A stretch of DNA of 64,000 bases from Zootoca vivipara. Lineage: Eukaryota. The translations under genes and the position numbers were made by a program. Of this stretch, positions 1,077 through 44,018 are shown piece after piece. Within the stretch, counting starts at the first letter, position 1. The number at the start of each line of letters is the position of its first letter. The notes below the pieces were generated by a model. The model had not been told where the DNA came from. It made no database searches and saw only the letters and a list, made by a program, of their open reading frames with translations. The stretch covers positions 32,240,001 through 32,304,000 of the forward strand of contig NC_083290.1 in NCBI RefSeq assembly GCF_963506605.1. The letters run 5' to 3'.

Positions 1077-2312
1077 TACATACATTCCTGGTCGATCTAG
1101 TCTAGCATCCTGTTCTCATCAGATGAGCCCATCAGGTGCCTATGGGAAACCAGAAGGCAGTATCTGTGCAGGAGCACCACTTGTGATTCCCAGCAACTTG
1201 CATTTAGAGGCATACTAAAGTAGGGGAAGAACATAGTCATCCTAGCTAGTTACCCCTATTTTCCAATAATTTATTGAATCCCCGTTTAAAGTTACCACTG
1301 CGTCTTGTAGGAGCGAATTCTATCGCTTTAAATAATGTATTGTGCATGAAGAACTACCTCTTCTAACATTCAGCTTCATTGGATGACCCCAGGTTCCGGT
1401 TTCAAGGTGGCAAGTCTCTCCACTTTCTTTAGCATCTCTGCTGTATTCTGTGGTACAAGATTCTTCCTTACCACCCATATCCCTTGGGCATTGGATTAAG
1501 AACAATAATTTTCAAATTTCTTTTGGAATTTATTTCTTAAATTTCCAAATCGTTTCCATCCCCCTAGGAGTCTTGCTTTCTTATCAGGACAAACTACACT
1601 GCAACCCCTGCATATCTACTCAGAAAGCAGCTTGCAGATAAATTGGTATAGGACTGGATCCTTAATTTCATGCAACACGCAGTACAACCATATGCACGTT
1701 TTGTTGTGTCCAACAGGACTTACTCCCTAGAATTTCAATGGTACCGCATTTATATGTTGTCTGAATTTTCTTCACAACCTGGACCACCACCCTGAAATAA
1801 ATAAATGGTAAGCCCACCTGGGACCGTAGAGTGAAGAGCGAGTAATAAATAGTAAGTACACTATGGATTGCAGACTACGTGCCAGCTTTTTAAGAGTTGC
1901 ACACAGCCAGAACTTCTAGTGCATCATATAGAACTGTCCTCTCCAGGGATCCCATTGACCATGAATTAGTACAGGGAGGAGGAGGGAAGGATTTTATCCC
2001 TCTATCTCCATGGTGAACATCCTGTTTGCCAATAGTAGGCAGGTAGAGTGGCACGCAATTCAATAAAAGTGCCAATGAAGAGTACTGTAAACTGAAATCA
2101 GTTCCAAGTCACACAAGTCACAATGCACTCAAAGCGCAATCTGTGGACATATTAGCTGATCTGTTCATTCATAATTATTTACATGTAACATGCAACACGT
2201 TTACAGTCCGTGTACACCGTTGCTTATCTGTACCAATAAAGAAAGATGTATTCCTTTGCACAAACAATTATACATGTGTACAGAAGAGCCTGTAGCTGCA
2301 TTCAGTATAATG

Positions 2313-2726
2313 CAGGGTCCCCAAACTACGGCCCCCGGGCCGGATGCGGCCCAATCGGCCTTCCGTTCCGGCCCGCGACGACCCCCGCCGCCCGCTGCCG
2401 CCGCCCGCTCTCACGGCGCGCGGCGCAGCGACGATCTAAAAAACCGGCAAAAAATCGCCGAAAATCCTTTGTGCGCATGCGTATGGGCCTCTCCCGACCC
2501 GGAAGAGGTCATTTCTGGTGCACTTCCGGGTCGGGGGAGGCCCATACGCATGCGCACAAGCGATTTTCGGCGATTTTTCCCCCGCGCGTGTGCGTGTGCG
2601 CATGCGCATGGGCGCACACTCCCCCGCCCTCCGGCCCGCTGCGCGCGCACTCCCCTGCCCTCCGGCCCACTGCGCGGTCGGCGCGGCGGGCACCGGCCCG
2701 CCGCGCGGTAAGTCTGGGGACCCCTG
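2313..2726. mobile_element. Young non-autonomous hAT transposon (414 bp)
   Basis: TIRs CAGGGTCCCCAAACT / AGTCTGGGGACCCCTG; perfect 8-bp TSD GTATAATG (2305-2312, 2727-2734); CpG-rich and undecayed; internal hairpin 2450-2578. Confidence 0.93.
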
Positions 2727-4541
2727 GTATAATGTGTGCACAAGCCTACAGACTTAAAAGGGTTGGTGTGTTGCGTTGTCTCTGTCATTTATAGTTGCTC
2801 CAAGGGTTTAACTGGGCCAGTGATGAATTAGAACAGGGTGGGTGGAGGAGGTTTGAAATAACTGCTGGATCTGAAGAGTTTGGTGCCTGAAATCACGTGA
2901 CATTCCAACAAGGTTCCTTAGTTATAAGAGGGAAATCTGGGCTGTTTTTAAGCCAGTCGGAAGCTCTGTGGGAGAATCACCAGAACTACATTCTGAAGTT
3001 TTGGTTTGTTTAAAGACTTTGATTTGCCTTGTCAAAAGATGAGGTTTCTACCGTTGCTTTCGGTATTACTCAGTGCTCCGTGTTACACAACGGCCTTCAA
3101 CTCAGAGAAGCAAAAAGGAACCAAAACTGCTATGGTTTCATAAGGGTTGCTAAGCAAAATCATGTTAATGCGCCATGCTGTCCAGAACAACAGAGGACGA
3201 CACTAAACGGTCTATTCCAAATACATTTACTTAGAGAAAAGTTAAGTGAATGAATTAAGTTTTGACTTAAACAAACAAAAATCACATTCTATAACATTAC
3301 AAAAATAGGCACCGACAGCAAAAAGTCTGCCCTTATCTCTGCTTCTTGGCGAAGTGGCCTGCAAAACAAACTAAACATCCAAATAATACTTTGAGACACC
3401 CATTACATAGGCTGTAACAGGGATGGAGAACTTCTGGTGCTAGACTAGAGTCTTTGTCATCCTTGGCCACTAGCCATGAGGGCTGATGGGAGGTCCAACA
3501 CCATCTGGAAGACCACAGGGTCCCCACTTCCTGGGCTAAAATTTGTAGCAGACGAGAAAATTGTTAAGTATTAGATGGAGTATTCACTTTCTTCCCACTC
3601 TATCCACTCACTGGCCGATTCATCCAGGTCATGTGGTAGGGAAGAAATGCAGAACGCAGCTTATTATTTTCATCCAAATTTGCATGTGGTGGATTGAAGG
3701 AGAGGTCAGAATAGATTAAACATGTCAGGGGTGGGGAATGTCAGGCCTGGGTGTCCCCAATGTGGCTCTCATCTCTGTTTGGCCCTAGAATTTGCTCCAG
3801 GCCACACCCCTCACAGCCTCTCCCTCACAGCCCATGTGTTTTTGCTTGGCTCAACTGTGTCCTTGAACTCTGATAATGCCCCTTTTATTGCCTGGATGGA
3901 GGACAGAGAGGGGTGTGTGGGAGAGTCTGCAGATACTAGCTTAAAGGTGATACAGTATTTTTGTTTATTGCTCCTCCCACTTTTTCCTCTGCCCTCGGCC
4001 ATCATTAACACTTGGCCTTTAGAAGGCTTCCTAGAAGGGAATGTGGCCTTTGGGCTGCAAAGGTTTTCCCACCTATACAATCTTGAACAGCAGCATAAGG
4101 TCATTTGGTCTTGGTATATATCAGGGTGGTCCAACCTTTCATACCAACTGGGCTGCAAGGGTAATTTGACACATAACCGGCAGGTCACACACTGCCTTGT
4201 TGCATGGTGCAAGGAGGGTGAATGGAGCAAGGCCAAAAATTGACAGCCCTCTCCCAGCCCTCAAACTGCCTTTCCAATGCACTGGGCTTTGGAAAGGAGG
4301 TGCAAGGCAAGGCTCGGACAGGGTCCCAGAGCCCTCCTACCTCCTTCCCAAAGCTGGGAGAGTATGCTAACTACCCTTTGGGAAGGAGGCAGGAAGATGC
4401 TAGGACCCCGTCAGAGCCCTCCCGCCTTCCTTTGGGAAGGAAGCGAGAGGGGAGGGGGATCAAATGTTGCCGAAGGCTGCCAAAAAGGGCTTCGAGGGCC
4501 ATGTGTGGCCCTCAGTCCACGTGTTGGACTGCCCTGGTGTA

Positions 4542-5461: not shown

Positions 5462-8400
5462 TTATTTCTTCTGTTGCAGGATGTCCGGTTCGCCTATTCT
5501 GCTTTTGTTCTGACAGAGCTCCTGAAGATCTGAGAGAGACACAAAAGCTGTTAGGAGCTTTGAACCAGGCAGTTATGAAACCTCAGACAACCTTCACCCA
5601 TTTATAAAAACTCCATGGTTAGCACCCAGTAAACAGGCATTGCTTTCTACCATTTTGCCACAAGCAGTTGCATCTACTAGCTTGCAGGGCTGTACGTAGG
5701 AAGTTGTCTTAAACCAAGGTGGAGCATTGCTTTCTTTAGCTCGGTACTGTCTACAAGGGACAGGGAACCTGTGGCCTTATCAATGCTGTTGGACTAAAAC
5801 TCCCACCATCCCTGACCATTAGCCATACTTTTTTGAGTTCACGGCTCCCAACTACATTCTTTCTGCGGCAACCCTGTGGGGCTCAGGAGCCCAGCTATGT
5901 CACCTCTTGCCTGCAGAGCTGTCAGCCTCTCACCCTTTCTCGAACACCCTTCCTTGTGGAGTGTTCCCTCCTCTCCCATCTCCTTGGGAGTCCTCCAGGC
6001 AGCCGCTGCTGCCGCCCCTGGTCTCTGAGCTGCCCTCCTCCCTGGTCTCAAAGAAAGGTGCCTCCTCTCACTGGGACTTGTCTGTCCATTCCCAACAGCA
6101 AGGGCTGGTGGACTGGCTGGCTGGGCTCCCTCAACCACTTGCTTGCTTACTGTGAGGGGCCGCTTCAGCTCCTGGCAATCAGACTCACCCACCCCCAACC
6201 AGCCCCAGAGACACCATTCGCCTGGGGAGCTTGTAGCCAGAGCTGGTACAACAAACAGCTGTGCAAGCCTTTGGGAGGCAGAGACACAATAAGGCATTTG
6301 GGGGGGGAGGAAAGAAGGACAGAGGCCAGTGTTGCCCACAGCACCCCTGACCATCATTCAAGGCACCCCAGGGTGCCACAGCACATTGGTTGAAAACCAC
6401 TGATGTATTCCATAAGGTTAGTTACCTGGTAAAACAGGAAATTAAGGGTGAGAGTTCTGGGCAAAGTGAAAGTGCTGGTTTTGCCATAAAGGCTTTAGTG
6501 ACTCAGGGCCACAATACCTCAAGGACCGCCTCTCTCCATATAAACTGGCCCGGACTCTGCAGTTATCATTTGAGGCCCTTCTTCATGTGCCTCCTCAACA
6601 TGGGGTCCGAAGGGTGGCAACACAAGAATGGGCCTTTTCTGCAATAGCTCCCCGTTTGCAGAATCCTCTCCCCAGGGAGGTTCGACTGGTGCCTACGTTA
6701 TGATTATACATCTTTCAGCACCAGGCAAAGACATTCCATTACAACCAGGCCTTTGGCTAACAAACATCCTATATCCTTTTGAATGTGTTTGTGGGAATGG
6801 GTGGAAGAAGGGTAGTTATTGTTTTGTAGGGTTTTTGTTTGTTTGTTTCTTGCTTCTTCTTATGCATTTTGTGGTTTTATCTTGCGTTTTTATGTTGCGA
6901 ACCGCATAATTTAATAAAACAATAAATTTAGCCACCAGACTGGAATGCTGAGAAAGGGGCAGCTGAGGCAGTTATGACGGGGGGGGGGAGAATAGGACTG
7001 TCAGACCAGCAAGGAATAAGAAAGTATGGTTGTGAATTTGTGGAGTACAACCGATGCGCTGTCAGGCTTCAGGGAATCAGCTTCTCCACACACACCCCGT
7101 GGCAGTAGATAAGCAGGACAAAGGAAAAGGAGTCTTCTTACCAGTTAGAAACTTTAATGATCACAGCGAGAGAACTAAGAACCCATCTACTAGGAATGGC
7201 GGTGCTCCCAACTAAGAATTCCACCCCCTTATGTCCCTATCATCCACGTCACTCCTACATCTTGTAACCCGAGCTTGTACCCTCTGTGCTTTCTGTTCTG
7301 CCACTTTCTCAGCTCTTTTTGACCTCGGGGAAAGCGGATGAATGCTTTCCAGAGACAGTGAATCTGTTAACACACACACTCTCTCTCTCCCAGTCTTTAT
7401 TCTCCTTGCTGTTCCCCATCCAGTATTTCCCAGCTTCTGCCTTCTGAACTGTGCCCCTCTGCAAACCACTGTTCCAAATCCATACTGTCCTCCTGCTCCT
7501 GGGAAGATTCAGGATCCTGATCAGGAGCAGGGGGAGGCTCCCACTGTTCTTCCTCAGTACAGCCCTCCTCAGCACGGTTCCTGACATGCACCCACAGAAG
7601 TGGTTAAGCTGCTAAGAAACCCTCTCTTACTTACAGCGCAGCACCGTCTCTCTGATTTGCCTGAAGCTGGTATCTTGGAGCGTTACGCTGATGTAATAGA
7701 GGCATCGGAGCTCCCGGGGATAGTCTTTGCGGTCCATGTCCTTCAGCACCGGTATGGTGCGCCCGTTTGCCATGGGCGCCTCCGTCAAAGCGTGGTGCAT
7801 TTGGTAACGGCACCAGGGATCCTTGAGGAAGTTGGGTGTAATGAGCAGCACCCAGCAGTGGCTGTTCTGGACGGCGTCGCACAGCTCCGTGACGATGGCA
7901 CCCCCCGGAGCAGAGTCCCGGGGCTGAAGAAAGCAACGGAAGTGTTCCGGCTGGCTCTCTAGGTAGGAGACCAGCTCCTCCACAAACCCAAGGTCGCCCT
8001 CGTTGTGGCAGATGCACACGTCATACAACTTGTTCCAGCGGGCGCTGCCTGAAATGCTCACACTTACCTGAGAGGCAGAGGGCACCTGTTTGGGGCTGGC
8101 TGTCAAGTTGCTTGTTGGGGTGCTGGAACTACTCAACGGAGGAGGTGAAGGCGAATGTTTAGAAATATTGTTCAAGTGGCATTTTGTGGAGCTGGAAGTG
8201 TTCCTGGACTTCTGCAGAAGTGCCTTGAACCAGCCTGTAAAGTCACCAATTCAGAATCAGGCTAAATTGAACAGCAGCCAGCAGAGAGAGATCTAACCAA
8301 GACAGGTCCATGTAATGGTTTTAATTCTTTGATCAACCAGTCATTTCATGGATCGTTTTGCCCTTTCTTTATGGTATTTTACATTTTATTGTTAATATCG

Positions 8401-8753
8401 TTGTACACTATGTTACACTGTATGACTTGGTGGTCTTAGTGTGTGTACACACAGAGATAGAAAACAAACACAGATACAGTGGTACCTCGGTTTAAGAACA
8501 GTCCAGTTTAAGAACGATTTGGTTTACAAACTCCGCAAAACCGGAATTAGTGTCTTGGTTCAAGAACTTTACCTCGGTCGAAGAAAGGAATCCAAACGGT
8601 GGAAGGGCCCCGGCGGTGGGAGGCCTCATTAGGGAAAGCACGCCTCGGTTTAAGAACGGTTTTGGTTTAAGAATGGACTTCGGGAATGGATTAAGATCAT
8701 AAACCGAGGTACCACTGTACACACAAAATGAGTTTGACATACTGACCTGCCAT
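5462..8753 (-). CDS. TIRAP: TIR domain-containing adaptor protein (Mal), 224 aa, 3 coding exons: 8753-8747, 8234-7635, 5529-5462
   Basis: ATG GCA G|GTCAGT splices to AG|GC TGG TTC, giving MAGWFKALLQK. The TIR domain reads YDVCICH...RCFLQPRDSAPGGAIVTELC...LLITPNFLKDPWCRYQM. Donor T|GTAAGT joins AG|AT CTT CAG, giving YLQELCQ...QQKK*. Phases are consistent (7+600+68=675 nt). Confidence 0.93.
7060..7586 (-). mobile_element. Solo LTR (527 bp, probably Gypsy/ERV-type) in the last TIRAP intron
   Basis: Inverted termini TGTCAGG...CCTGACA; 5-bp TSD TGCGC (7055-7059) / TGCAC (7587-7591), differing by one CpG transition; ATTAAA on the minus strand at 7153-7158. Confidence 0.75.
8477..8717. mobile_element. 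Tigger/pogo-like MITE in TIRAP intron
   Basis: TA|CAGTGGTACCTCGGTTTA...TAAACCGAGGTACCACTG|TA, perfect 18-bp TIRs. Confidence 0.9.
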
Positions 8754-11497
8754 CCCAATAGCAAGACTATCTTCTAGGGATGGACTGATCAGTTCTGGCT
8801 CGCAGCCGTTTTGCGTGTATTCATTCACAAGGCTGTTCCATTCCGTTTCTGCATCGATCTGTAATTTTTAAAAAAGCACAAAAATTATCATTATTTCTGT
8901 TCATGCTTTAACCAAAAGTTAGAATTTTTGTATGCTATTTTCATTATTATATGCCCTTTGATGTGCACTTGATCTCGGTATATGAGTTTTTATATGCCTG
9001 TGCTCCAGAACTGCATTGCAAAATTCAAGGAAGTGTGAATTTTGAAAGGTGCCTGGGTTTTGATCTGCGCCCTATTTCAGATAGTGACATTTAGGTAGGT
9101 TTGCCTTTAAATGTGACCTGAATCAAATTTCTCCCCATCACTATTCAAAGCAGAACTTTATTGTTTGTCTAAATCTCCCACCCCACCAAACCAGCTACTT
9201 GAGCCAATTTCTACATCAGGGATGGGCAACCTGTGGCAGTAGGGCTGCCCTGGCCCAGTTTCAAAAGACCCCTGGAAGCAATCAGTTCAGACCTGAACTC
9301 TTGGAAGACAGTGAGCTAATTCATCTAGTTCACTGGGCAGGGAAGAAAAGGGTAGGCGGGGAGAAAAAGATCTGGCCCCACCCACAGTTGTCTTTGGTCC
9401 GCCCACTGCCACCACATGGCTCCCTCAGGTCCTCAACAGGCTTGCCCTCTGACCTACACAAAAAGGAGCCTGCAATAAGGGTGGGCAGTATACTGCAACC
9501 TATGGATTATCGTTTGCTGTCAGGTCATTTTTAGTACAGACATATGGAGTGTGTGTCAATTCCCAATTTTCTGTTTTAGACTTCCAATTGCAGAGAAGAG
9601 TGTACTGCAATAAAGTCTAAAGATTCAGGGGGGAAAGGCAAATTATAAGCCCTACACCTCTCCGAACTAGCAAAGCAGCTTGATATTTAAAAAATAAATA
9701 CTGTATCATAAACCAAAATCTTAACAACTCACAAACAAATACACTCAATAAATCCTACATGCCCACATTCCTGTTTACTCAGCATCCAGCATGCTCCCAT
9801 TGCTGATTTGGGAAGAGGTGTGCCGTAGGATGGAAAGACATGGCTGAGCCAAAGAGGTTTTGCAAGCACCACCAATCAGCTGATCAGCACCACCTCCAAA
9901 GCACAGGACTCTGAAAGGGTGAAGATCAGCTGACTGCCAGTGCTTGCAAAGCACTGCCCAGCTAGTGGTACAAACTTCAACATGACGACCAGCTGGTTGT
10001 CAAGGCTTGCACAACTCTGGGAACCTTGCTTTGAGTGACAAAACTTTGTGGGCAAAAACAGGTTTGCCCGACATTATAACCTCAAGCGCATAATCCCACC
10101 CATCTGTCAAGCCTGGTCCAGGCAGCACCCAGTTCAACTCTAACCTAATTGAGGTGTCTTTCTGGATCAAAGGGCACATTTGAAAATCTGAGCAACTTTT
10201 TTGGACACCACAAAAAAACACATTTCGCAGAAGAAAAATTGATGATGCTCAGAAACCTGTCCCTCAGCGTGCTCTCAAACTAAAAAAACACAGGGGAAAA
10301 AGCATGCTGGACACCCCAAAGGCCAAAAAGCCACCCCCTTTTTTAAATGTGGGGGCAGGGGTCCTTGGGAAGAAACAATGTGGGAGTGGTATCTGAGGAC
10401 AACATGATGGGGCCCCCGAGTCTGAATGCAGCAGAGCAGACTTACTTGGGTGTAGGTCTCACAGGCTGCAAACACATCATATATTTCAAACACGTGGCTT
10501 CCCCAAAGAATCCTGGGAAATGTAGTTCACCCCCAGAAAGATACAATTTCCAGCACCCGAAGCAAACTACAGTTCCCAGAACAGAAGTCATGTATGTAAT
10601 TTATGTATGTGATTTATATGTAATTCGTATAATTTGAATTAATTAATTAATAATGTGTTTTAAATGCATGGTGTGCAGATGCAGCCTCCGTGGACCTAAT
10701 TTTAGGCAAACATGCAGAGAATTGCAATGTTGTAAGATTTTAATTTTATGACTGTTATAAATCTGCTTCCAAGGGAAAGTTTAAAAACCCTTATCTAAAT
10801 GGAAGTGCATCAGTTTGCATTCCAAGGCATACATTGGGGGGGGGGCTAGTGGAGTTTTAGAACTGTGTACCCAAACTGCTGCAATCCGTTACAGTATTTC
10901 ATAATTAAAGTCAACAGTAGTTTTGCTATATGGGGAAAAAGTAAGTGCTGCACCCAGATTTACCCCCATCTGGCTGCCTTATGTCACCATTCAATCTCAA
11001 CCCTGAACTACTTCTGTTCCTTCTAAAAAAGGAACAGGCTCCCTCGCCCCCCAGCGTGGACCCGAATGTACACGACTACCGGTAATATCGGTGCATAGAT
11101 TTCAGTGGGTCTGCTCTGAGCGGGTAGACTTTGAGCAGAACTTCGTTGGCTACAAGCCATTGGATTTGAACGGCGCGGTCTACGAATGTGTGGCACAAAG
11201 AATTAAAAAACTAAAAGCCAGGAAGAGAGGCCAAAATTGATTGGAGTCCTCCTCGCCCGCCTGGGCGCGGAAGGCAGCGCTTCCTCCTGCATTTTGCAAC
11301 TTTATTTAGGAAGTACTGTACAGTAACTGCTCAAACCGCGGCTCTGCGGCCGCCTCGCCCCTCTTGCGTAGCGGAGGCATTGGCGAGAAACTGCGATCAG
11401 AAAGCGAGAAGAGGAGGATGGACCGGCAGCCGGAACCCTATGCAAGTTTACTCCGGAAAAAAAGGGCAGTCTAAATTCGATGAGGCGTACTCCCAAG

Positions 11498-11636
11498 CAG
11501 GGGTGCCAACTTGAATATGGAGGGGGGGGTGTAAACAACCCCTACCCTGCATAAATCGACGTGGTGCACGGACACCATTTGAATGACAATGCCAATACAA
11601 TTGGGGAGCCTCGGCCCCCAGGAGTTGGCTCCTATG
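11498..11636. mobile_element. Short hAT-like MITE
   Basis: CAGGGGTGCCAACT...AGTTGGCTCCTATG termini; imperfect 8-bp flanks CTCCCAAG/CTCCTATG. Confidence 0.55.
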
Positions 11637-12151
11637 CTCCTATGCACAGCATCCTAACTAGCCGGATTAACCAACCTTTCCTTCTGAAAGTGAGTTCGGG
11701 GCACAGCGAAGCTGCGTAAATTCCTGCGCGATGGTCACAATTCGGCCCGGTTGCCTTTCCTTCTGGCGATCGTGGAACCGGGGCGAAGCAGATCCCCTCC
11801 GAAGTGGGCGCGCGCGATCGGTCTCTGCTGCCTCCGGAGGAACTCGCCTGGGCTACTTCCCTCTTCGCCTGGGTGCTAAGGACCTCTCGGGTGCCCCCTG
11901 ACGCTGCTTTTTTTTTTTTTTTTGCAAGGAGGAGGATCTTGTGGCGCTTTGCAGGTTTTCCAGACTACTCGAAAGCGCTCAAACGCACGCCTACATGGAA
12001 GTAAACTCCGTTAAACTCGGTGGGACCTACTTCCGATAAAACACGCCCAGGAGACTGAACTGAAGGTTGCGATCCTCTATATCCATTTTTCTGGAAGTAG
12101 GCGGTCCACTGAACACAGTGACTTGGCGGACAAGCCTAACAATGCCTACTC

Positions 12152-12348
12152 AAATAAAAAAATTCCTTCAGTAGCACCTTAAAGACCAACTAAGTTTTTT
12201 ATTTTGGTATGAGCTTTCGTGTGCATGCACACTTCTTCAGACGAAAGCTCATACCAAAATAAAAACTTAGTTGGTCTTTAAGGTGCTACTGAAGGAATTT
12301 TTTTTATTTTGCTTCGACTCAGACCAACACGGCTACCTGCCTGTAACT
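12152..12348. mobile_element. Penelope-like element remnant (inverted pseudo-LTR) with hammerhead ribozyme core
   Basis: Near-perfect inverted arms at about 12152-12220 and 12241-12309. Minus strand 12240-12207 reads CTGAAGA-AGTGTGCATGCACAC-GAAA-GCTCATAC. Flanking duplication AATGCCTACTC(AAA) at 12141 and 12349. Confidence 0.8.
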
Positions 12349-12989
12349 AATGCCTACTCAAAAGTAAGCCCTATTCAGTGTAGTTTTCTCCCAAGCAAAT
12401 GGTGTTAGGGATTGCAGCCTTCCTTCTGAGTTAGCAGGTATAGAATTACACTACTGTATTGCTACGTATTTGCTATTCTTGGAAGTTCCGGGGCGATCAC
12501 TAATTTAAATAAAAATTCCAGAGCAAAAAAACAACAGCACCTGAAAAGCGGTGCATTTCAATCGCCTTGCACCCCGCCTTTTTTGGGGTAGCATTTTAAA
12601 GCTCCTCTGGCATCGCTTCAGCCCCCTTTTCGGTGGTTAAGTCCAACCGGTTGCTGGGCATCTTTAATCAGAAGTACGTGCCAATGAGGCCAATTGGACC
12701 GGCCCCGATATGTGCTCTGGGCTGCAACTGCAAAGTCTGCAGCGGTGAAAAGAAATGGCAATCCTATTTTGTCTAGCGAATGGAAAAGAGTAAATTCCAT
12801 TCCAGCATGTGATAATCTAACTCTCCCCCCCCCCACATCCCTCTTCATTGCATTCAAAAGACACGGGCTCTCTTTCACAAGAGACATTGAGGCTGCAAGT
12901 CTGCAGGCTAGATTCAGGAGTACAAAAACCTGTTGGGTATATGCAGTGGTATATTTCCTAGAAAAGCAGTTTAAGATCAAGTTGCCAAG

Positions 12990-13340
12990 GCTGCGATCCA
13001 GAGCACGCTTACCGAGGACTAAGGCTCCATTGAACTCAGCGGGACGTCCTGTCGCGTCACTGTGCCTAGGACTGGGGCAAAACCCCGATTTGCACGGCAC
13101 GTGTGAATACTACTCATGCCCGATGACTCTCGAGTAACGGGCGGGAGCTCCGTTTATTTAACCAATTCAGAGTAATGGAGTATGCGGGAGGGGCAAAGGG
13201 TAGGGAGAGGCTGCAGTAGCAGGAAGTCACGCCCCAGAGTGACGGCGGCAGTTGTGTAACTTCTCGGATGCTGTGAGGTTGGGCATCACTAAGTTACGCA
13301 AGTATAGCCGGTTTGCAAGAGCCGAAGTGCGGTCGGAGAG
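12990..13340. promoter_or_regulatory. Putative promoter of the (6-4) photolyase, possibly bidirectional with TIRAP
   Basis: Local CpG enrichment. E-box CACGTG 13098-13103, CCAAT 13162-13166, ETS CAGGAAGT 13220-13227, D-box-like GTTGTGTAAC 13251-13260 and GTTACGCAAG 13293-13302. Candidate donors: GAG|GTTGGG (+, 13278) and TCG|GTAAGC (-, about 13012). Confidence 0.6.
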
Positions 13341-15375
13341 GGTGGAGAGAGAAGTTAGAAATGTCTCTTTATAAGATTTTTCTCCTCTGCCTGGAAGAAT
13401 CAAGGTGGATTAACCTAACCCTGCAGTCCTATACATGCCTACTCAGCTCTGAATCCTACTGAGTTCAATAGATCTTACTCCCAGGTAAGTGGAGATATAG
13501 GCTGGCAGCCTGAGGCTGGTTGGAGGTGCGTTGCAGTTGCAGAATAAGCTAGCTGAGTGCTGTACTGCTTCAGACTGCAGATGGGGAATGTCCCTTTTAG
13601 CAGCTGTTCCCCGCAACCTTCCAGCAGTTTGACTTCACCCCAAAAGGCACACTCCTCCATTGTCTCCCCAGAGGGAGGGATTGCAACAGTTGCAACAGCA
13701 ATTAAAGGCGGGGTGGGGGGAGCCTCCCAGCTCAACTAGAAAACTAGCACATCAGCAAGAAAGTTTCTAGCTCAGCTCTTTTCCTGATGCTTTTGTCTTG
13801 CAGGAATTTATTATTAAATGTGTAGAAATATAAAAAAATATGATTTCTCCGCACACTTACAGTCTGAAGTTGTACATGTTCAGAATTCTACTCCCTCATT
13901 TCTTTCAAGGAAAGGGAGCCTTAGCTCTGGGATAAGGCGCTTGCTTTGCCTGTACAGATTCCAAGACTTCTGTCTGAAGCCCTGGATATTTGCTGCTAGT
14001 CATTGTGGATAATATTGACCTAGGAAGCTGCCTTATTGGCATTGGTCCATCTAGCTCAGTACTATTTACACTGACTGGCAGCTGCTCTCCAGGGTTTCAA
14101 GACAGGTTTTCTCCCCTCCTTGCCTGGAATTGCCCAGGATTAAACCCTGGACCTTCTACCTGTGAGGTAGATGCTTTAACCACTGAACAATGACCCTTTC
14201 TTGACCAGAACAGAGCAGTGACCTAGGCTTCAAATCCTCATAAGTATTCTGTGCAGAATAGCTCTGAGCGTCTGCTCCGCAAGGGTCAAGTGTAAAACAA
14301 GATTTTGAACTTGTGGAGGATAGATGATTTAGATGCACACAATTGCTGTTGGCATTGTGTAAGCAGAAGATCCATTTGACATCGCTGTGTGCATCGCTTT
14401 GTTAATGCTTGCATAAGACTGAAGTTTTGCATGCCATCAAAACATTGCTGAATGTGGGCTGCCAGTGGTTTGCCAAGAATGAGAGCCCGCACATGCTGGA
14501 TCGTGCACAACTGCCTCCCCGTAGGCTGATGGCAGAAGAGGCGCCTGCTGGAATATTGAGATTTGGTTAATTAATTTGGGCTCCGCAACTGTGAATCCAA
14601 CTGCACACAAGCTGAAGCTTCGAGGCTACTGTGTACGATGCATATACTGCTATTTATTTTTTTCAATGTCCTAAGGATCGTTTTCAACTGGCTTCCTCCC
14701 TGTATCTGCAATGCAGAAGTATTTTTTAAAAAATATATTTTTATTAGTTTTCCAATATTACCCAATAAAAGTTCAAATATAACCATATCAATTAATTTGC
14801 AATGCAAAAGTATTGTCCACATGCACCATTGCTTTTAATTTGTATTTCATTTAAAGCTGAAGCTCTAGTATTTCTCCGTTTAAAACATCCGCCCATTTCA
14901 AAGTAGTGCAAAATATGTTCAAGTGCATTTTTAAGGCAGTAATTCTACACCCATCCACCTGGGAGCAAGCCCCATTGAACTTATTGACATGTATTTCTGG
15001 GTGAACACATTGCACTGTGTTATATTTTTTGGGGGGTGGGGAACCCTACTGGAGCCTAGTCTTGAAGAAGATGAAGCTTATTACACATGTTGCTTAGCTT
15101 CCACATCTTTTTACTGCATGTGGAAGACCATCCTTTTGTACTTGATGTTAATCAGACATACTGATTGGCCTCTTATTTTGGTGCTCAGAGCAAACAGATT
15201 AAACAATCCACAAGCATTCACTGAAAGGGTTGGGAAAATTCACTCTTTGATCAACCAGATTGTGAACATGGGCAAAGTGAGGCAGCCACCCTGGGCATAT
15301 GCCCGCCAGAGTCCTGTGCTGACCAGGATTCATTTGAAACCAGGGTTGTAGCAAGTTTGAAACCCTAGTTAAGAG

Positions 15376-15686
15376 CATAGCTGCCAAGTCTCCCGTTTTT
15401 CATGGGAAACCCCCTTTTTAAAGTAGTTATCCCGAATGGTGGAATATCCCATAATTCCCCTGGATTTTCAAACCAGCTCCTGCCGACCAGGGAGGCTCCT
15501 TCTGTGCATGTCTGGACATGCGCAGAACCAATTTTGGGTGCCGCTCTGCCATGTCTGGGCACCGGAAATAGGGCAGCGCCGGCACTGGAAGTCGCTTCTA
15601 CACATGTCTGGACATGTGTAGAAGCGACTTCCGGTGCCGCACTGCTGCTGATCCCGGATTTTTCACTCCGGGAGTTGACGGGTATG
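15376..15686. mobile_element. Non-autonomous hAT element
   Basis: Imperfect TIRs CATAGCTGCCAAGTCTCCCG / CCGGGAGTTGACGGGTATG; perfect 8-bp TSD GTTAAGAG; internal palindrome about 15572-15648. Confidence 0.85.
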
Positions 15687-15809
15687 GTTAAGAGGGAACT
15701 GGGTTAACCTTCATTGTGACTGGCATCAGTGCAGACAGCAAACAGAGGGCAGAATTTGAGATGGAGCATGGGAACCTCGAGCTTCCTCGCTTCAGAACTC
15801 TTTTAACTA

Positions 15810-16320
15810 CAGTGGTACCTTGGTTCTCAAACTTACTCCGTTCTGGAAGTCTGTTCCAAAACCAAAGCGTTCCAAAACCAAGGCACGCTTTCCCATAGAA
15901 AGTAATGCAAAATGGATCAATCCATTCCAGACTTTTAAAAACAACCCCTAAAACAGCAATTTAACATGAATTTTACTATCTAACAAGACCATTGATCCAT
16001 AAAATGAAAGCAGTAAACAATGTACTGCAGTCACACAATCAATCAGTAGCTGAACTGGTTTCCACACAGTCGCAAAAACAAAACAAAAAGAGCCACAAAA
16101 ACGCAAAATAGGGAGAAAAAACAGACAGACCTCAGCATAACACTCAAATTGGAAGTGTAACACTCAAATCAGAAGTGTGGCACTTAAATCGGAAGCGTAA
16201 CACTCAAAACGGAGCATGTTCGGCTTCCGGAAAAAAGTTCGCAAACCGGAACACTTATTTCCCGGTTTGCAGTGTTTGGGTTGCAAGTTGTTTGGGTACC
16301 AAGGCGTTTGAGAACCGCTG
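15810..16320. mobile_element. Tigger/pogo-like MITE with an internal ~20-bp tandem repeat
   Basis: TA|CAGTGGTACCTTGGTTCTCAAAC left end; decayed right end TTTGAGAACCGCTG|TA; about 4 copies of TAACACTCAAATCGGAAGTG at 16138-16215. Confidence 0.75.
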
Positions 16321-16712
16321 TATTGTCTTTAAGTGCCTCAGTGTATGTGCCTTTGAGTTTGCCCATCTGAAAGGTCTACAAGTTAAATCCATGTGTTTCC
16401 CTAAATGTTTATTTAGTGGGGGTTGAGTGAGGTCAACCTTTGTGGCAGGACAGGGAAGTTGTGGCCCTCTAGATGTTGGGTCATATTGCATCACCCCCAT
16501 CCTGCATGGCCAATGGTCAGGGATGATTGGAGTTGTAACTCAAGAAACACTTGGAAGACCACTGGTTCCCCATTATTGCCTAATGAGAAAGCTTGTGTAC
16601 CACTGTCTTTGTAAAAAAAGTAAGAATATTCTCCTGTTCCCACCTAGCTTTTTCCTGCTTGGACACTGCTCCTAATATAAAGTGGGGAGAAACAGGCTGG
16701 TGACGCAACAGA

Positions 16713-19700
16713 ATGACTCATATTTCGATCCATTGGTTCCGCAAGGCACTTCGCCTCCATGATAACCCTGCCTTGCTAGCAGCTATGAAGGATAGCGCTG
16801 AGGTCTACCCTATCTTTATCTTTGACCCCTGGTTCCCGAAGAATATGCGGGTCAGCGTTAACCGCTGGAGATTTCTGGTTGAATCTCTGAGAGATCTGGA
16901 CGAGAGCCTCAAGAAGCTGAACTCAAGGCAAGTACCAGATGGGCCAGTTTTCAAAATACTGTACACCAGGGTGATTGAAGGGGCCATTTCTACAGTACTT
17001 TCCCCAGACCTGAATGGTTTTCTATGGAGAGGCCAAATGGGGAGGCGTGGGGGTCAAATTGGCCTACTAGGATGCAGGTGCTAAAAATACAATTCTGGCA
17101 CACAGTGCTCTCTGTCAGTTTGCCATACTGTCCCCTCCCAGATCCTAGTCCTCTCTGTCTTGACCTCAGAAACTCACCTAGTCTTGGGTGCTTTCTTGGT
17201 TTCTGAGCAATCAAAGGTTGTGTTGTCTCCTCAGGCTGTTTGTAGTTCGTGGCAGTCCTGTAGAGGCATTCCCAGAACTATTTAAGAAATGGAAGGTCAC
17301 CCTGCTCACATTTGAAGTCGACACAGAACCTTATGCAAGGCGCCGTGATGCTGAGGTGGTGAGGGTGGCAGCTGAACATGGAGTCCAAGTTGTTCAGAAA
17401 GTGTCCCACACTTTGTACGACACTGAAAGGTGGGTACAAAGAGCAAAGGCCATTACAATTTTGCATGCATTTCTGGAATCCACCAGGTAAAAGTTTCTTA
17501 GAGATTATTATTAATAATTGTGTATATCAGTCATTTTTATTTTATTTTTCCACAACAAAGGAACTCCAAGCAATTTCCAAAGGGGGAAAAATCCATTGCT
17601 GGACATTCCTGATAATGTATTGTCATCATTTCCAACAGAATCATTATTGAGAATAATGGCAAGGCCCCTCTGACTTACACTCGGCTGCAGACGGTCTTGG
17701 CTTCTCTGGGTCCTCCAAAACGGCCTGTTCCAGCTCCTAGTTTGGAAAACTTGAAGGGTGAGTACAAGTCTCTCTGGACTTGGGGATGCAGGCAATGGGT
17801 ATTTATGGATTCTGACAAGTACTGTGGGCCCTTTGGAGTGTGTGAGAGAGCTGTGACTTGGATAGAAATGCTGTGGAATAATCTGCCTTCTTGGGATGGG
17901 TGGCCTAAAGGTAAAGGTACCCCTGACTGTTAGGTCCAGTCGCGGATGACTCTGGGGTTATGGCGCTCATCTCGCTTTACTGGCTGAGAGAGCCAGCGTA
18001 TAGCTTCTGGATCATGTGGCCAGCATGACTAAGCCGCTTCTGGTGAACCAGAGCAGCGCATGGAAATGCCATTTACCTTCCCGCCAGAGCAGTACCTATT
18101 TATCTACCGTATTTTTCGCTCCACAAGACGCACTTTTTTCCCTCCTAAAAAGTAAGATGAAATGTCTGTGCATCTTATGGAGTGAATGCGTGGTCCCTGG
18201 AGCCGAATTGCCCAGGGGCGAAATGCAGGGCTTTTTTTTTTTAAAGAAAGAGCTAAAGGCTAACAAGAGGGAAAGATAGTGTTGAAAGGAACCCACTCAG
18301 CAGCTGATTGCAATAGATCGGGGAGGGAGATAAGGGAGCTAGCTCCTGCCCTGCCCCGCCCTGCCCCCTTGCCCAGGCCTCAATTGTTGTCTGCAGAGGG
18401 AGGCTGTTTTCTCAACGACATGTGACTGGCTGATTAGATTATCTGTCTGGAAACTGTAGAAATGGGTCCCTTTCCTTTCCTAGAGAAGCTGCAGAACTGT
18501 GAGTTGAACCCCATAAAAACAGGATTTTTTCCCCTTTGCAAGGTAAGCTCAACAACTTTGAGCTGATCCTCAAAAATGGAGCTTTCCTCCTTTGCAAAAG
18601 AAGCTTCCTCAAATATTTAATGGGGGGGGGGCAAAGGCACCTAGGCCTCTAGGAGTTGGCTGCTATGCCTAGGACAATTCAAGAAAGCAAAAAAAATTTT
18701 TACTTGTTTTTCTTCTCTAAAAAACTAGGTGCGTCCTATGGTCAGGTGCGTCCTATGGAGCGAAAAATACGGTTCTTGCACTTTGACGTGCTTTTGAACT
18801 GCTAGGTTGGCAGGAGGAGGGACCAAGCAACGGAAGCTCGCCCCGTCGCGGGGATTCAAACTGCCAACCTTCTGATCGGCCTACCCATACCCAATTTACA
18901 TTTTTCAGTGCTTATGTTTGTTCTAGGCAGCATTTCATGGTTAGCAAGGGAAGAGCTTGACCATAAGCCTAACCATGGATGATGATAAGAATAATAATTT
19001 TATTTATACACCACCCATCTGGCTGGGTTTCCCTAGCCACTCTGGACAGCTTACAGCACATGCTGTGATGACATGCTAAGGTTTGTCTGAGCAAAGCATG
19101 AGGAGTAAAATAGAACAGAGAGGAGCAAAGTGGTTGTGAACACCTCTCTGGGAATCCACATGTTTGCACAGGCCCAGTAAGCCATAGTTGGTTCACTGTG
19201 TTGTGCAGATCAGGCCAGTGAATAGCACGTCACAAGGGTGCTTAGCTAATCAGATCTGGCGACTGCTGAAGGCAAATAATACTAAGCCAAAGTGACAATG
19301 AATGGACAAATATTTTGCCAATGTGATACAAAAAATGCTGAAAAGAGGTGCGTGATTTACAACGTAGTCAAAAAAGTTAGCATAAAAGGTACTGGTACTT
19401 TGACTTGGCCTTGTTATGAATAATTAGACAAGTTCTTACATTGATTGAGTCATCGGGGATTGAGAGCGGCAAGATTTGGGCACAGGGAGCCAGACGAACC
19501 AGAGATGCCCTGTTCCGTACGAGCTTTGAATCTGTCGGATCAATGTTCTAACCTAGAGTGCAGCACATCTGTCAAAGAGGACCATGATAAAGAGTATGGC
19601 ATCCCTTCTCTTGAGGAACTGGGACAGGATCCAAAGACAGCTGGCCCCCACCTTTATCCAGGAGGAGAATCTGAGGCCCTTGCTCGGCTGGACTTGTATA

Positions 19701-41800: not shown

Positions 41801-43156
41801 GAGGCAGTCTTTTTTTTGAAGACTAGTAATTATTTTAAATACAAAAAACTTACAAAAATGCAGGTACGTGGTATTACCTTGGAATATGTGTTTTCCTGCT
41901 CACTAAGGCTGAAATGCTAAGCAGCATACCAGGGAGGTAAACTCCATTGAACAAAGTGGAATTTATTTCTGAAGAAGCATGGACAGAATTGTGCTACATT
42001 GCTTTTACTTTTGGATTCACATTACATACTTACTGAATTCATTACTGTCATTTTATAGGTTCAAACCAAAGAAACATGTGATAGTTATTGTACAATGCAC
42101 TATATCTTTTATTCAATTAAATAAGGAAATAACAGACTTCAACCTCCTCACTTGTAGTTATCAAGTGTCGTGAGACACACTTAAGAGCAACTGAAGCAGC
42201 CCACTTTTTAAAGTACTTACGGTACATTAAAAATAATTGAAACAAAATAAAATTTTCCTTCCAGTAGCACCTTAGAGATCAACTAAGTTTGTCATTGGTA
42301 TGAGCTTTCGTGTGCATGCACACTTCTTCATATTTGAAGTATGCATGCACACGAAAGCTCATACCAATGACAAACGTACTGGTAGTTGGTCTCTAAGGTG
42401 CTACTGGAAGGAATTTTTTTTATTTTGTTTCGACTATACCAGACCAACACGGCTACTTACCTGTAATTAAAAATAATGTAATTATGTGTTGTTTGCAAAA
42501 AGGAATCAGGAATCATCTAAAAAAGGCATGAAGAGTCTCCCACTTCAGAACTCTTCTGTTAAGATGCACACTGCACAGATTTTAGTCAGTTAAATCATTC
42601 AATTAATCAAATTTGATTTTAATAAGCTGACAATTATTTCCAAGTACTTGCATTAATCATAATTTTTTTTAAAAAAAAATTCTGTATGCACAGGTATGTA
42701 GATTTCAGCCAATCGGCCATCAAGTCAGTCAATTAATTAAACAAGGCACACCTGTAACGGGGATTAAAAACTGTCCCTTTTTTTTAAACAAACACTTAAA
42801 AAAATTACTTTAAGTTCTATTTAATTAACATCCACTACCAAAGAGATCTTAGCCAATCAACCATTCCAATAAAGTAGGAAGGATTGGATGAAAATGCCAA
42901 TACCAACCCACTCGTCTTTAATTCGATTTTTACTTTTCATCGAGAGACTCTCAGCCCTAGATTATCCTCATGACAACCCCGCGAGGTAGGCCAGGCCGAG
43001 AGAAGCCACCCCCGCCTGATTCGCACCTTGGACGGGGTCGTAAAGCCGGGGCTCCCCTGTACGAAACGGCCGGCGAGGCTCCGCCGGGCTCGCTGAGGGA
43101 CTTGCCGCCCCTAGCAGAGGACGCAGCCTGCCCAGCAGCCTCCGCCCGCGGATCAT
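30552..43156 (-). CDS. FOXRED1: FAD-dependent oxidoreductase domain-containing protein 1 (complex I assembly factor), 501 aa, 11 exons: 43156-43027, 40505-40285, 39544-39434, 38141-38023, 37671-37577, 36649-36548, 35872-35796, 34676-34516, 33398-33269, 32263-32159, 30806-30552
   Basis: Arg-rich presequence-like N-terminus; Rossmann [11 protein letters not shown]; [16 protein letters not shown]; EGWFDPW; VNAAGAWS; WAGYYDYN...[17 protein letters not shown]. All introns are GT-AG and in phase (1506 nt). Confidence 0.96.
31683..31922. mobile_element. Tigger/pogo-like MITE (same family as 857-1076, opposite orientation)
   Basis: TA|CAGTCGTACCTTGG...GAGGTACCACTG|TA with the CCAAT palindrome. Confidence 0.85.
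32538..32830 (+). mobile_element. L2 LINE 3' end
   Basis: Encodes the ORF2 C-terminus RTLRS...[15 protein letters not shown]...TFRRHLK, then the 3' UTR and a (TTG/TTA)n tail. Confidence 0.85.
32836..32894. repeat. (TTG)n(TTA)n microsatellite
   Basis: Directly visible. Confidence 0.95.
33994..34130. other. Assembly gap (137 N) in FOXRED1 intron 8
   Basis: Run of N. The flanking exons join in phase, so no coding exon needs to lie in it. Confidence 0.99.
36860..37078. mobile_element. Tigger/pogo-like MITE
   Basis: TA|CAGTCAAACCT...AGGTTTGACTG|TA. Confidence 0.85.
38570..38646 (+). mobile_element. CR1 LINE 3' terminal fragment
   Basis: GGGGGTTGGACTGGATGGCCCTTG...(ATTCTATG)n tail. Similar fragments near 44450-44650 and 48550-48630. 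Confidence 0.8.
38839..39068. mobile_element. Non-autonomous hAT element (termini related to 2313-2726)
   Basis: ...GCAAACTAAGGCCCGGGGGCCGG... and CTGAGGGACAGTGGACCGGCCCCCTGCTGAAAAAGATTGCTGACCCCTG; imperfect TSD GTACAGTG/GTATAGTA. Confidence 0.7.
40994..41262. mobile_element. Tigger/pogo-like MITE
   Basis: TA|CAGTGGTACCTCA...TGAGGTATGACTG. Confidence 0.75.
41355..41768. repeat. Decayed ~400-bp fold-back palindrome
   Basis: Paired blocks around a centre near 41552: CATAGCTCTAATT/AATTAGAGCTATG, TGAAACAACTAAACAGTTA/TAACTGTTTGGTTGTTTCA, ATCAGTCTTC/GAAGACTGAT, TGCACCAA/TTGGTGCA. Confidence 0.8.
42238..42465. mobile_element. Second Penelope-like inverted pseudo-LTR remnant with degenerate hammerhead cores
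   Basis: Same family as 12152-12348; 12-bp TSD ATTAAAAATAAT (42226-42237, 42466-42477). Confidence 0.8.
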
Positions 43157-44018
43157 GCTGCCGAATCTACTCCCCTCAGGTCGACTGAGACAAGCCCGCG
43201 CGGACACCGAGACGCCCTCTTTTTACCTCACCGCCTCCTTTTTTAACGCGTCACAGCAAACGCCCCGCCCCCTGTCTGCCCTGATAGGACCTGTTGGGTT
43301 CAGAGTCCGGGAAGCACCGCCCACTCCGTGGGGGACCTCCACCCCTTCTCAACTGGCCAATAGAGGGCCTCCTTCTTTGCCCCGCCTCGCTAAAACCCGC
43401 CGGGGTCAGAACATCGTAAGCACCGCCCACTCTTCAAATAAGTCCCCGCCTACTTTCCTCCGTCCTTGACCAATCCGCCGCCGCGATGCAATCCCCACCT
43501 CCTCCTCCTCCACAACCAATCCTGTCTCTCCTCATGACAGGCCATCCTTAGTTTTGACGTGGCCCTTCCATACTCACCCACCGGAAGCTCTTATCACCTA
43601 AGAGCCAGTCGGCTCGGCTCTTCTCGTTCCCGCCCCTTCCGCCGTCAGTGTTGTGTCAGACACAAGCGCGTCGTGCCTCATCATCGCAATCCCCTCTTGG
43701 GTTTTAGACTACTGTAGGTACTGTCTCTATGTTGCGACAACCTTATTAAAAGTTGTTGTTTTAAAGCACATTTGCTTCGACCACTCTATTGTTTTGCTAC
43801 GTCTATGGTCCTCGCTTCCTTTTCCGGAAGCGAGGCCCAATCGCTCTCCCCCTTTCTCCCCTTGTTCCCGCCTTCTATCCGGAAGCTCGCTTCCGGCGGA
43901 AATGAGGCGCGCAGTGAAGAGAATAGCCTGACGTGGGTAAGGAAGTCGGGCTGGTTTCCCGGCGTCTCAGGCTCCCCTCCCCGGTTCCCCCCTCTCTTCC
44001 CCCCCTCCCGGCTCCACC
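43157..44018. promoter_or_regulatory. FOXRED1/SRPRA bidirectional CpG-island promoter
   Basis: 862 bp between divergent ATGs; GC boxes, several CCAAT, CCGGAAG ETS sites, and TGACGTGG at 43555-43562 and 43929-43936. Confidence 0.85.

What the first reader, a model, noticed from the sequence alone, without database searches (positions are those of the whole stretch)
12990..13340. Candidate light/clock-responsive promoter (E-box plus two D-boxes) between the (6-4) photolyase and the TLR adaptor TIRAP
Seen: the two genes are head-to-head. This CpG-enriched patch holds CACGTG (13098-13103) and two TTA(C/T)R(C/T)AA-type PAR-bZIP sites 42 bp apart (GTTGTGTAAC 13251-13260, GTTACGCAAG 13293-13302). 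Splice donors point both ways: GAG|GTTGGG (+) toward the photolyase acceptor at about 16647, and TCG|GTAAGC (-) at about 13012 toward TIRAP. Established: in zebrafish, D-boxes bound by PAR bZIP factors mediate light/UV/ROS induction of photolyase and clock genes, and E-boxes mediate CLOCK:BMAL1 control. Inference: a basking reptile may keep fish-type light-inducible repair, and the same element could co-drive a TIRAP 5' exon, linking sunlight or the clock to TLR2/4 signalling.
Basis: partly seen in the sequence, partly recalled or inferred. Interest (0 to 1): 0.8.

Follow-up and report, generated by a model that had tools for sequence, protein, structure and literature searches.

The report
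Likely photolyase promoter with unproven light motifs
A small CpG-rich patch between a lizard's (6-4) photolyase and TIRAP genes looks like a real promoter and carries E-box and D-box-like motifs, but whether light or the clock controls it, or whether it also drives TIRAP, could not be tested here.

Summary
CACGTG lies at 13098-13103, GTTGTGTAAC at 13251-13260 and GTTACGCAAG at 13293-13302. They sit in a 351-bp CpG island (GC 0.56, CpG o/e 0.93 against 0.385 for the window). The island lies between TIRAP (minus strand, ATG exon 8773-8748) and a (6-4)-type photolyase (plus strand, acceptor 16647|16648, ATG 16713).

The patch looks like a TATA-less promoter. In order it has a GC-box, a CCAAT box, a G-quadruplex motif and an ETS site, then the two D-box-like sites, and GC skew changes sign across it. 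The D-box-like sites match RT(G/T)AYGTAAY at 9/10 and 8/10, as well as functional zebrafish D-boxes do.

That match level is common, about one 8/10 site per 351 bp. An E-box alone, or a 9/10 site alone, turns up in about 10% of shuffles, and all three conditions together in 0.6%. The same E-box plus 10-mer pair recurs 10 kb away in ordinary DNA.

The proposed plus-strand donor is weak, and a perfect CAG|GTAAGT donor lies at 13484|13485. The minus donor at 13013 is moderately good.

Verdict: a plausible promoter and a testable hypothesis of a known kind, not shown.

The parts
12990..13340 (.). Short CpG island, the candidate promoter patch
   Evidence: GC 0.561, CpG o/e 0.93, 25 CpG, 96th percentile of the window. 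GC skew goes from -0.09 (12800-13099) to +0.27 (13100-13399). No repeat copies elsewhere in the window.
13098..13103 (.). E-box CACGTG, single, with no E'-box nearby
   Evidence: One of 6 in 64 kb. P=0.10 in shuffles of the patch.
13139..13147 (+). GC-box GGGCGG overlapping an E2F-like GGCGGGAG
13162..13166 (+). CCAAT box
13186..13205 (+). G-quadruplex-type motif GGGAGGGGCAAAGGGTAGGG
   Evidence: One of 7 such motifs in 64 kb on both strands.
13220..13227 (+). ETS-type site CAGGAAGT. The plus-strand start is inferred to lie just downstream.
   Evidence: The start position is inferred, not measured.
13251..13260 (.). D-box-like site 1, GTTGTGTAAC. It matches RT(G/T)AYGTAAY at 9/10 and differs by one base from the functional zebrafish cry1a D-box GTTGTATAAC.
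   Evidence: PMC3516543; PMC2759001.
13293..13302 (.). D-box-like site 2, GTTACGCAAG. It matches at 8/10 and is a PAR/C-EBP hybrid core, TTACGCAA.
   Evidence: The core is unique in the window, but 8/10 matches occur about once per 351 bp.
13275..13283 (+).
   Evidence: -0.2 bits on an approximate donor matrix.
13482..13490 (+). Alternative plus-strand donor CAG|GTAAGT, with the exon ending at 13484
   Evidence: 8.7 bits, the best-scoring plus-strand GT in the window. It lies in a short stretch with weak repeat matches.
13007..13015 (-). Minus-strand donor TCG|GTAAGC, with the exon ending at 13013
   Evidence: 3.3 bits. One of only three minus-strand donors of at least 2 bits between 13300 and 8780.
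16648..16927 (+). First coding exon of the (6-4)-type photolyase. Acceptor at 16647|16648, ATG at 16713, GC donor AAG|GCAAGT.
8748..8773 (-). TIRAP exon holding the start codon (ATG GCA G|gt), preceded by an acceptor
   Evidence: The N-terminus MAGWFKALLQK matches Podarcis muralis TIRAP.
11250..11900 (-). Two other unique CpG-rich patches (about 11250-11450 and 11650-11900), rival sites for the TIRAP start, with a weak donor at 11546

Best explanation
The patch is a small TATA-less CpG-island promoter. It most likely marks the non-coding first exon of the (6-4) photolyase gene. Transcription would start around 13225-13250 and splice to the acceptor at 16647|16648, more probably from the strong donor at 13484|13485 than from 13277. 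Like most CpG-island promoters it probably also fires on the minus strand, and that transcript may or may not be a TIRAP first exon ending at 13013. Basal activity would come from the GC-box, CCAAT and ETS factors. The CACGTG and the two D-box-like sites could add clock or PAR-bZIP/NFIL3 (or C/EBP) input. Shown: the motifs, the composition and the gene order. Inferred: the start site, the exon structure, and any factor binding or light response.
For: The patch meets CpG-island criteria and stands out from its flanks. Its motifs run GACGTC, CGTCA, E-box, GC-box, CCAAT, G4 and ETS, followed by the two D-box-like sites. GC skew changes sign at about 13100. The photolyase ATG exon starts at a strong polypyrimidine acceptor 65 nt before the ATG, in CpG-poor DNA, so an upstream non-coding exon is expected. 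The only verified promoter in the window, between the FOXRED1 and SRPRA starts at about 43.2-44.0 kb, is also CpG-rich, so CpG patches do mark promoters here. In the zebrafish photolyase genes, two D-boxes are necessary and sufficient for induction, and in ddb2 they lie just downstream of the start site (PMC7891740). Site 1 differs by one base from the functional cry1a D-box (PMC3516543). One weak hint: a probable RNA assembly of the same species holds 13% of the sampled words of 12600-17600. That is the share expected from the two coding exons plus an exon of about 255 nt.
Against: No transcript evidence was obtained. Motif statistics are weak: each motif alone has P of about 0.1, and 8/10 D-box matches are at background frequency. 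The same E-box plus 10-mer pair occurs by chance at 2894/3082. The long exon model would carry three upstream ATGs (read). A CCAAT (about 16509) and a TATAAA (16676) sit just before the ATG exon, so a proximal start is not excluded. Two other CpG patches could serve TIRAP.
Confidence: 0.55

Rival explanations
1. The patch is a fish-type sunlight module. The two D-box-like sites bind PAR-bZIP/NFIL3 factors and make the lizard (6-4) photolyase inducible by light, UV or ROS. The E-box adds clock control, and the same element co-drives a TIRAP first exon.
For: Two D-box-like sites lie 42 bp apart near the inferred start, as in zebrafish photolyase and ddb2 promoters (PMC7891740). Match levels of 9/10 and 8/10 equal or exceed those of functional fish D-boxes. 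E-box plus CCAAT plus D-box is the make-up of the per2 light-responsive module (PMC2759001). The minus donor at 13013 is among the few usable ones.
Against: Motif presence does not predict a light response. Mammalian D-boxes are clock outputs only (PMC6627103), and the Aiptasia (6-4) photolyase gene has a predicted D-box but is not light-induced (PMC8097283). The E-box is 153 bp from site 1, not adjacent as in the per2 module. The statistics are weak. No paper on reptile photolyase regulation was found. The TIRAP link has no evidence beyond one donor string.
Confidence: 0.12
2. The patch is a promoter for TIRAP or for an unannotated non-coding transcript only. The photolyase would start elsewhere, for instance just upstream of 16648 near the CCAAT at about 16509 and the TATAAA at 16676.
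For: CCAAT and TATAAA sit upstream of the ATG exon. TIRAP needs at least one upstream non-coding exon.
Against: The TATAAA is only 32 nt from the ATG, which leaves almost no leader. The sequence before 16648 is a good acceptor in CpG-poor DNA. Positive GC skew and the G4/ETS order point rightward, and a perfect plus donor follows at 13484.
Confidence: 0.18
3. The patch is not a promoter. It would be an orphan CpG-rich remnant or a distal enhancer, and its motifs are chance matches.
For: The island is short (351 bp). Each motif alone appears in about 10% of shuffles. Other CpG-rich patches in the window are transposon-like: 2300-2720 is a palindromic element. Part of the left edge resembles a common squamate repeat from memory, but this was not confirmed by self-comparison.
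Against: The ordered promoter motif array, the skew switch, the unique sequence and the position between two genes that both need upstream exons.
Confidence: 0.15

Closest known systems
Zebrafish photolyase and ddb2 D-box promoters (Zhao et al. 2018, cited in PMC7891740)
   Same: A DNA-repair gene of the same family, with two D-box-type sites close to or just downstream of the start site and an E2F-like/GC element nearby.
   Different: The fish elements were shown by deletion and reporter assays to be necessary and sufficient for light, UV and ROS induction. Here nothing is tested. The sites are non-canonical, the host is an amniote, and the start site is only inferred.
Zebrafish per2 light-responsive module (PMC2759001) and the cry1a D-box GTTGTATAAC (PMC3516543)
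   Same: E-box, CCAAT box and D-box near a start site. Site 1 differs from the cry1a D-box by one base. The match level to RT(G/T)AYGTAAY is the same or better.
   Different: In per2 the E- and D-boxes are adjacent within a short core, and the module is conserved from fish to human. Here they are 153 bp apart, and conservation could not be checked.
Mammalian clock-output D-boxes bound by DBP/TEF/HLF and NFIL3 (PMC6627103)
   Same: The same motif class. This is a plausible alternative function, daily rhythm rather than acute light induction.
   Different: Mammals have no (6-4) photolyase, and binding here is untested.
Generic bidirectional CpG-island promoters, such as FOXRED1/SRPRA at about 43.2-44.0 kb of this window
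   Same: Head-to-head genes, a CpG-rich patch, no TATA, and GC-box/CCAAT/ETS motifs.
   Different: For FOXRED1/SRPRA the two first coding exons flank the island directly. Here both coding starts are 3.4-4.2 kb away and need unverified non-coding exons.

Membership tests
CpG island (Gardiner-Garden type) | Length at least 200 bp, GC at least 0.5, CpG o/e at least 0.6 | tested here: met
   351 bp, GC 0.561, o/e 0.93.
Bidirectional promoter | Two genes head-to-head on opposite strands | tested here: met
   TIRAP on the minus strand and the photolyase on the plus strand.
Bidirectional promoter | Two transcription start sites less than about 1 kb apart | not testable with these tools
D-box enhancer (PAR-bZIP/NFIL3 site) | Match to RT(G/T)AYGTAAY at the level of experimentally functional sites | tested here: met
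   9/10 and 8/10, while functional per2 and cry1a sites are 8/10. This level is also the background level, with 186 sites in 64 kb.
D-box enhancer (PAR-bZIP/NFIL3 site) | Binding by TEF/DBP/HLF/NFIL3 and loss of induction when mutated | not testable with these tools
   Needs EMSA or ChIP and reporter assays.
D-box enhancer (PAR-bZIP/NFIL3 site) | Conservation of the sites in orthologous promoters | not tested
Circadian E-box (CLOCK:BMAL1 target) | CACGTG present | tested here: met
   13098-13103.
Circadian E-box (CLOCK:BMAL1 target) | A tandem E-box/E'-box pair or a second E-type site nearby | tested here: not met
   No CACGTT/AACGTG and no second CACGTG in 12900-13450. A single CACGTG is equally a USF/MYC/TFE-type site.
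(6-4) photolyase (animal CRY/6-4 clade) | Photolyase homology region, closer to (6-4) photolyase than to CRY1/2 or CRY4 orthologues | tested here: inconclusive
   Pfam DNA_photolyase matches exons 1-2. The active-site exon is best matched by Drosophila (6-4) photolyase (89.8 bits, against CRY1 80 and pigeon CRY4 79). Other exons score best to CRY1/2 or algal aCRY, at levels too low for orthology. Pigeon CRY4 scores below CRY1 and CRY2 in all four exons tested, apart from a fraction-of-a-bit tie with one truncated CRY1 chain in the last. Lizards are reported to keep a (6-4) photolyase (PMC9498864). No full-length tree was built, because spliced models were searched exon by exon only.
TIRAP | TIR domain plus an N-terminal MAGWFK-type lipid-binding motif, with orthologues named TIRAP | tested here: met
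   Pfam TIR_2 at 7e-22. 94% identity to Podarcis muralis TIRAP, and 120 named orthologues listed. The N-terminus aligns from residue 1.

The most novel reading that the evidence does not exclude
An amniote keeps the fish-type sunlight response. The paired D-box-like sites make the lizard (6-4) photolyase inducible by light, UV or ROS. Because the promoter is shared, the TLR2/4 adaptor TIRAP is switched with it, tying basking or time of day to innate immune signalling.
Probability: 0.04. Interest if true: 0.75.

Novelty: new member of a known kind. Interest (0 to 1): 0.3.

Why it matters
D-box control of photolyase genes has been shown only in fish, and mammals lost both the enzyme and the light response of the D-box. 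A working pair of D-boxes at a lizard photolyase promoter would place the loss of the light response after the split from sauropsids. It would also give a simple reporter for testing direct light sensitivity of reptile tissues. As it stands, this is a precise, cheap hypothesis with named bases to mutate, not a result. The TIRAP link would matter only if a shared first-exon region is confirmed.

Tried and rejected

No other collection holds reptile DNA, so motif conservation stayed untested.

3. A literature search for the exact 10-mers returned only primers and unrelated sequences.

4. Self-comparison of 12500-14200 and 10800-12500 against the window found no repeat copies of the patch or of the 11.3-11.9 kb CpG patches. 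It found only a palindromic MITE at 12151-12350.

5. The Rfam scan of 8800-14700 gave only sub-threshold miRNA-like hits on that MITE.

6. Pfam on the 160-aa and 147-aa ORFs overlapping the patch found nothing.

7. The idea that the strong CpG block at 2300-2720 is a neighbouring promoter carrying the same motifs was rejected, because it reads as a palindromic transposon-like element.

8. The Zhao et al. 2018 paper with the fish photolyase D-box sequences is not held.

Exons were searched one by one by reference.

Full report
**Observation**

The sequence facts are right. CACGTG is at 13098-13103, GTTGTGTAAC at 13251-13260 and GTTACGCAAG at 13293-13302. GAG|GTTGGG has its last exon base at 13277 on the plus strand, and TCG|GTAAGC has its last exon base at 13013 on the minus strand. 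The stretch 12990-13340 has GC 0.561, 25 CpG and CpG o/e 0.93, against 0.385 for the whole window. That puts it at the 96th percentile of 351-bp windows, and its flanks fall to o/e 0.1-0.4. It meets the usual CpG-island criteria but is short.

**The two genes**

On the minus strand, the ORF at 7627-8175 is a TIR domain (Pfam TIR_2, 7e-22).
- Extended to its acceptor at 8234, it is 94% identical to Podarcis muralis TIRAP, and 120 named TIRAP orthologues are listed.
- The start codon sits in a tiny exon at 8773-8748 (ATG GCA G|gt) that begins at an acceptor. The Podarcis protein aligns from residue 1.
- TIRAP therefore needs at least one upstream non-coding exon.
- A further short coding exon lies at about 5536-5465.

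On the plus strand, DNA_photolyase exons start at 16713.
- The ATG exon begins at a good acceptor, ttctcctgttcccacctag|c at 16647|16648.
- It ends at 16927 with a GC donor, AAG|GCAAGT. Exon 2 starts at 17234.
- Exon by exon against solved structures, the active-site exon is closest to Drosophila (6-4) photolyase.
- The other exons score best to CRY1/2 or algal aCRY, but at about 60% identity, too low for orthology.
- Pigeon CRY4 scores below CRY1 and CRY2 in all four exons tested, apart from a fraction-of-a-bit tie with one truncated CRY1 chain in the last.
- Lizards are reported to keep a (6-4) photolyase (PMC9498864), so the label is reasonable.
- A note from another agent calls this genome the common lizard, which fits the lacertid best hit.

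**What the patch looks like**

From left to right it holds:

| Feature | Position |
|---|---|
| GACGTC | 13043 |
| CGTCA | 13055 |
| E-box | 13098 |
| GC-box / E2F-like GGGCGGGAG | 13139 |
| CCAAT | 13162 |
| G-quadruplex motif (one of 7 in 64 kb) | 13186-13205 |
| ETS site CAGGAAGT | 13220 |
| TGACG | 13240 |
| D-box-like sites | 13251 and 13293 |

- GC skew turns from -0.09 to +0.27 across about 13100.
- The patch has no repeat copies in the window.
- The one promoter I could verify in the window, between the FOXRED1 and SRPRA first coding exons (SRPRA ATG at 44019), is also CpG-rich.
- This array is what a TATA-less CpG-island promoter looks like. It points to a plus-strand start near 13225-13250. 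That position is an inference.

**Splice signals**

Scores come from an approximate donor matrix whose frequencies I recalled from memory.
- CAG|GTAAGT, with the exon ending at 13484, scores 8.7 bits and is the best plus-strand GT in the window.
- If transcription starts in the patch, that donor is the more likely one. Both D-box-like sites would then lie in the first exon, just downstream of the start. That is the arrangement reported for zebrafish ddb2 (PMC7891740).
- The cost of this model is three upstream ATGs in the longer leader.
- On the minus strand, only three donors reach 2 bits between 13300 and 8780: 13013 (3.3 bits, CpG-rich upstream), 11546 (2.4 bits, below another CpG patch) and 10446 (5.4 bits, CpG-poor).
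- The 13013 donor is therefore a fair candidate for TIRAP, but not the only one. The unique CpG patches at about 11250-11450 and 11650-11900 are rivals.

**How much the motifs mean**

The literature consensus is RTTAYGTAAY, or RT(G/T)AYGTAAY (PMC6627103, PMC2759001).
- The functional zebrafish sites are CTTATGTAAA (per2, 8/10) and GTTGTATAAC (cry1a) (PMC3516543). Variants such as GTTACTTAAC are also accepted (PMC12561580).
- Site 1 here is 9/10 and one base away from the cry1a site. Site 2 is 8/10.
- In the zebrafish photolyase genes, two D-boxes are necessary and sufficient for induction (PMC7891740). The resemblance is real.
- The specificity is low. The window has 15 sites within one mismatch and 186 within two, about one per 351 bp.
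- In 20,000 dinucleotide-preserving shuffles of the patch, an E-box appears in 10%, a one-mismatch site in 9.5%, two two-mismatch sites in 33%, and all three conditions together in 0.65%. The motif set was chosen after the sequence had been read.
- CACGTG at 2894 and the reverse complement of the very same 10-mer at 3082 form a second such pair, in DNA with no sign of a promoter.
- The E-box is single, has no E'-box partner, and is equally a USF/MYC/TFE-type site.
- TTACGCAA is a PAR/C-EBP hybrid and may bind C/EBP instead. This is from my own knowledge.

**Does a D-box imply light induction?**

Not by itself.
- In mammals the D-box is a clock output and does not respond to light, UV or ROS (PMC6627103).
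- The human per2 module responds to light only when placed in zebrafish cells (PMC2759001), so the cell decides, not the motif.
- In Aiptasia the (6-4) photolyase gene has a predicted D-box yet is largely unresponsive to light (PMC8097283).
- I found no paper on photolyase regulation in reptiles.

**What could not be done**

- Local scripts that counted motifs, or used the whole window file as the subject of a self-comparison, did read that stretch. Nothing from it was printed or queried.
- One hint only: a probable RNA assembly of the same species holds 13% of the sampled words of 12600-17600. The two coding exons in that stretch would give about 8.4%, and adding an exon at about 13230-13484 gives about 12.9%. 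This is arithmetic on an unlaid run that may be DNA, so I give it little weight.

**Verdict**

| Reading | My estimate |
|---|---|
| The patch is the photolyase 5' end | about 0.55-0.6 |
| It also supplies a TIRAP first exon | about 0.35 |
| The D-box-like sites confer light, UV or ROS induction in the lizard | about 0.12 |
| The full story including TIRAP coupling | about 0.04 |

If the light-induction reading holds, this would be a new member of a known kind of element, extending a fish mechanism to an amniote. It is a well-posed hypothesis with cheap tests, not a finding.

Noticed in passing
window 16925-16933 and 17228-17236: The first intron inside the photolyase coding region is a GC-AG intron. 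The donor is AAG|GCAAGT at 16927|16928 and the acceptor is ctcctcag|G at 17233|17234. The reading frame only works with the GC donor.
   Followed up: partly
window 12151-12350 (copy at 42239-42470): A palindromic MITE-like element of about 200 bp. It matches itself on both strands at the second copy (76-78% identity) and gives sub-threshold hits to many miRNA precursor families on both strands.
   Followed up: partly
window 2300-2720: The strongest CpG block of the window (GC up to 0.72, o/e 1.1-1.46) reads as a palindromic transposon-like element with inverted ends (cagggtccccaaac ... gtctggggacccctg) and internal mirror-image halves. It does not read as a gene promoter, and there are no Pfam hits on its ORFs.
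   Followed up: partly
window 2894-2899 and 3082-3091: A second CACGTG lies 188 bp from GTTACACAAC, the exact reverse complement of D-box-like site 1. This is a chance control for the motif pair.
   Followed up: yes
window 13186-13205: A canonical G-quadruplex motif, GGGAGGGGCAAAGGGTAGGG, lies on the plus strand just upstream of the ETS site. It is one of 7 such motifs in 64 kb.
   Followed up: partly
window 16485-16493, 16676-16681, 16700-16709: Just upstream of the photolyase ATG there is a C/EBP-ATF-type ATTGCATCA, a TATAAA 32 nt before the ATG, and GTGACGCAAC 4 nt before the ATG. This could be a weak proximal promoter or chance.
   Followed up: no
window 42968-44291: The FOXRED1 (minus strand, ...[11 protein letters not shown]) and SRPRA (plus strand, ATG at 44019, [20 protein letters not shown]) first coding exons are head-to-head across a CpG-rich stretch. 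The protein names come from my memory of the N-termini and were not searched.
   Followed up: partly
window 5465-5536 (minus strand): TIRAP has a further short C-terminal coding exon, matching residues 201-224 of the Podarcis protein at 75% identity. The stop at 7627 after the TIR exon is therefore probably bypassed by splicing.
   Followed up: partly
window 11905-11921 (minus strand): A 16-nt A-run sits between a SINE-like stretch (about 11925-12100) and the CpG-rich patch at 11650-11900. It suggests a retroposon tail next to a possible TIRAP promoter or exon.
   Followed up: no
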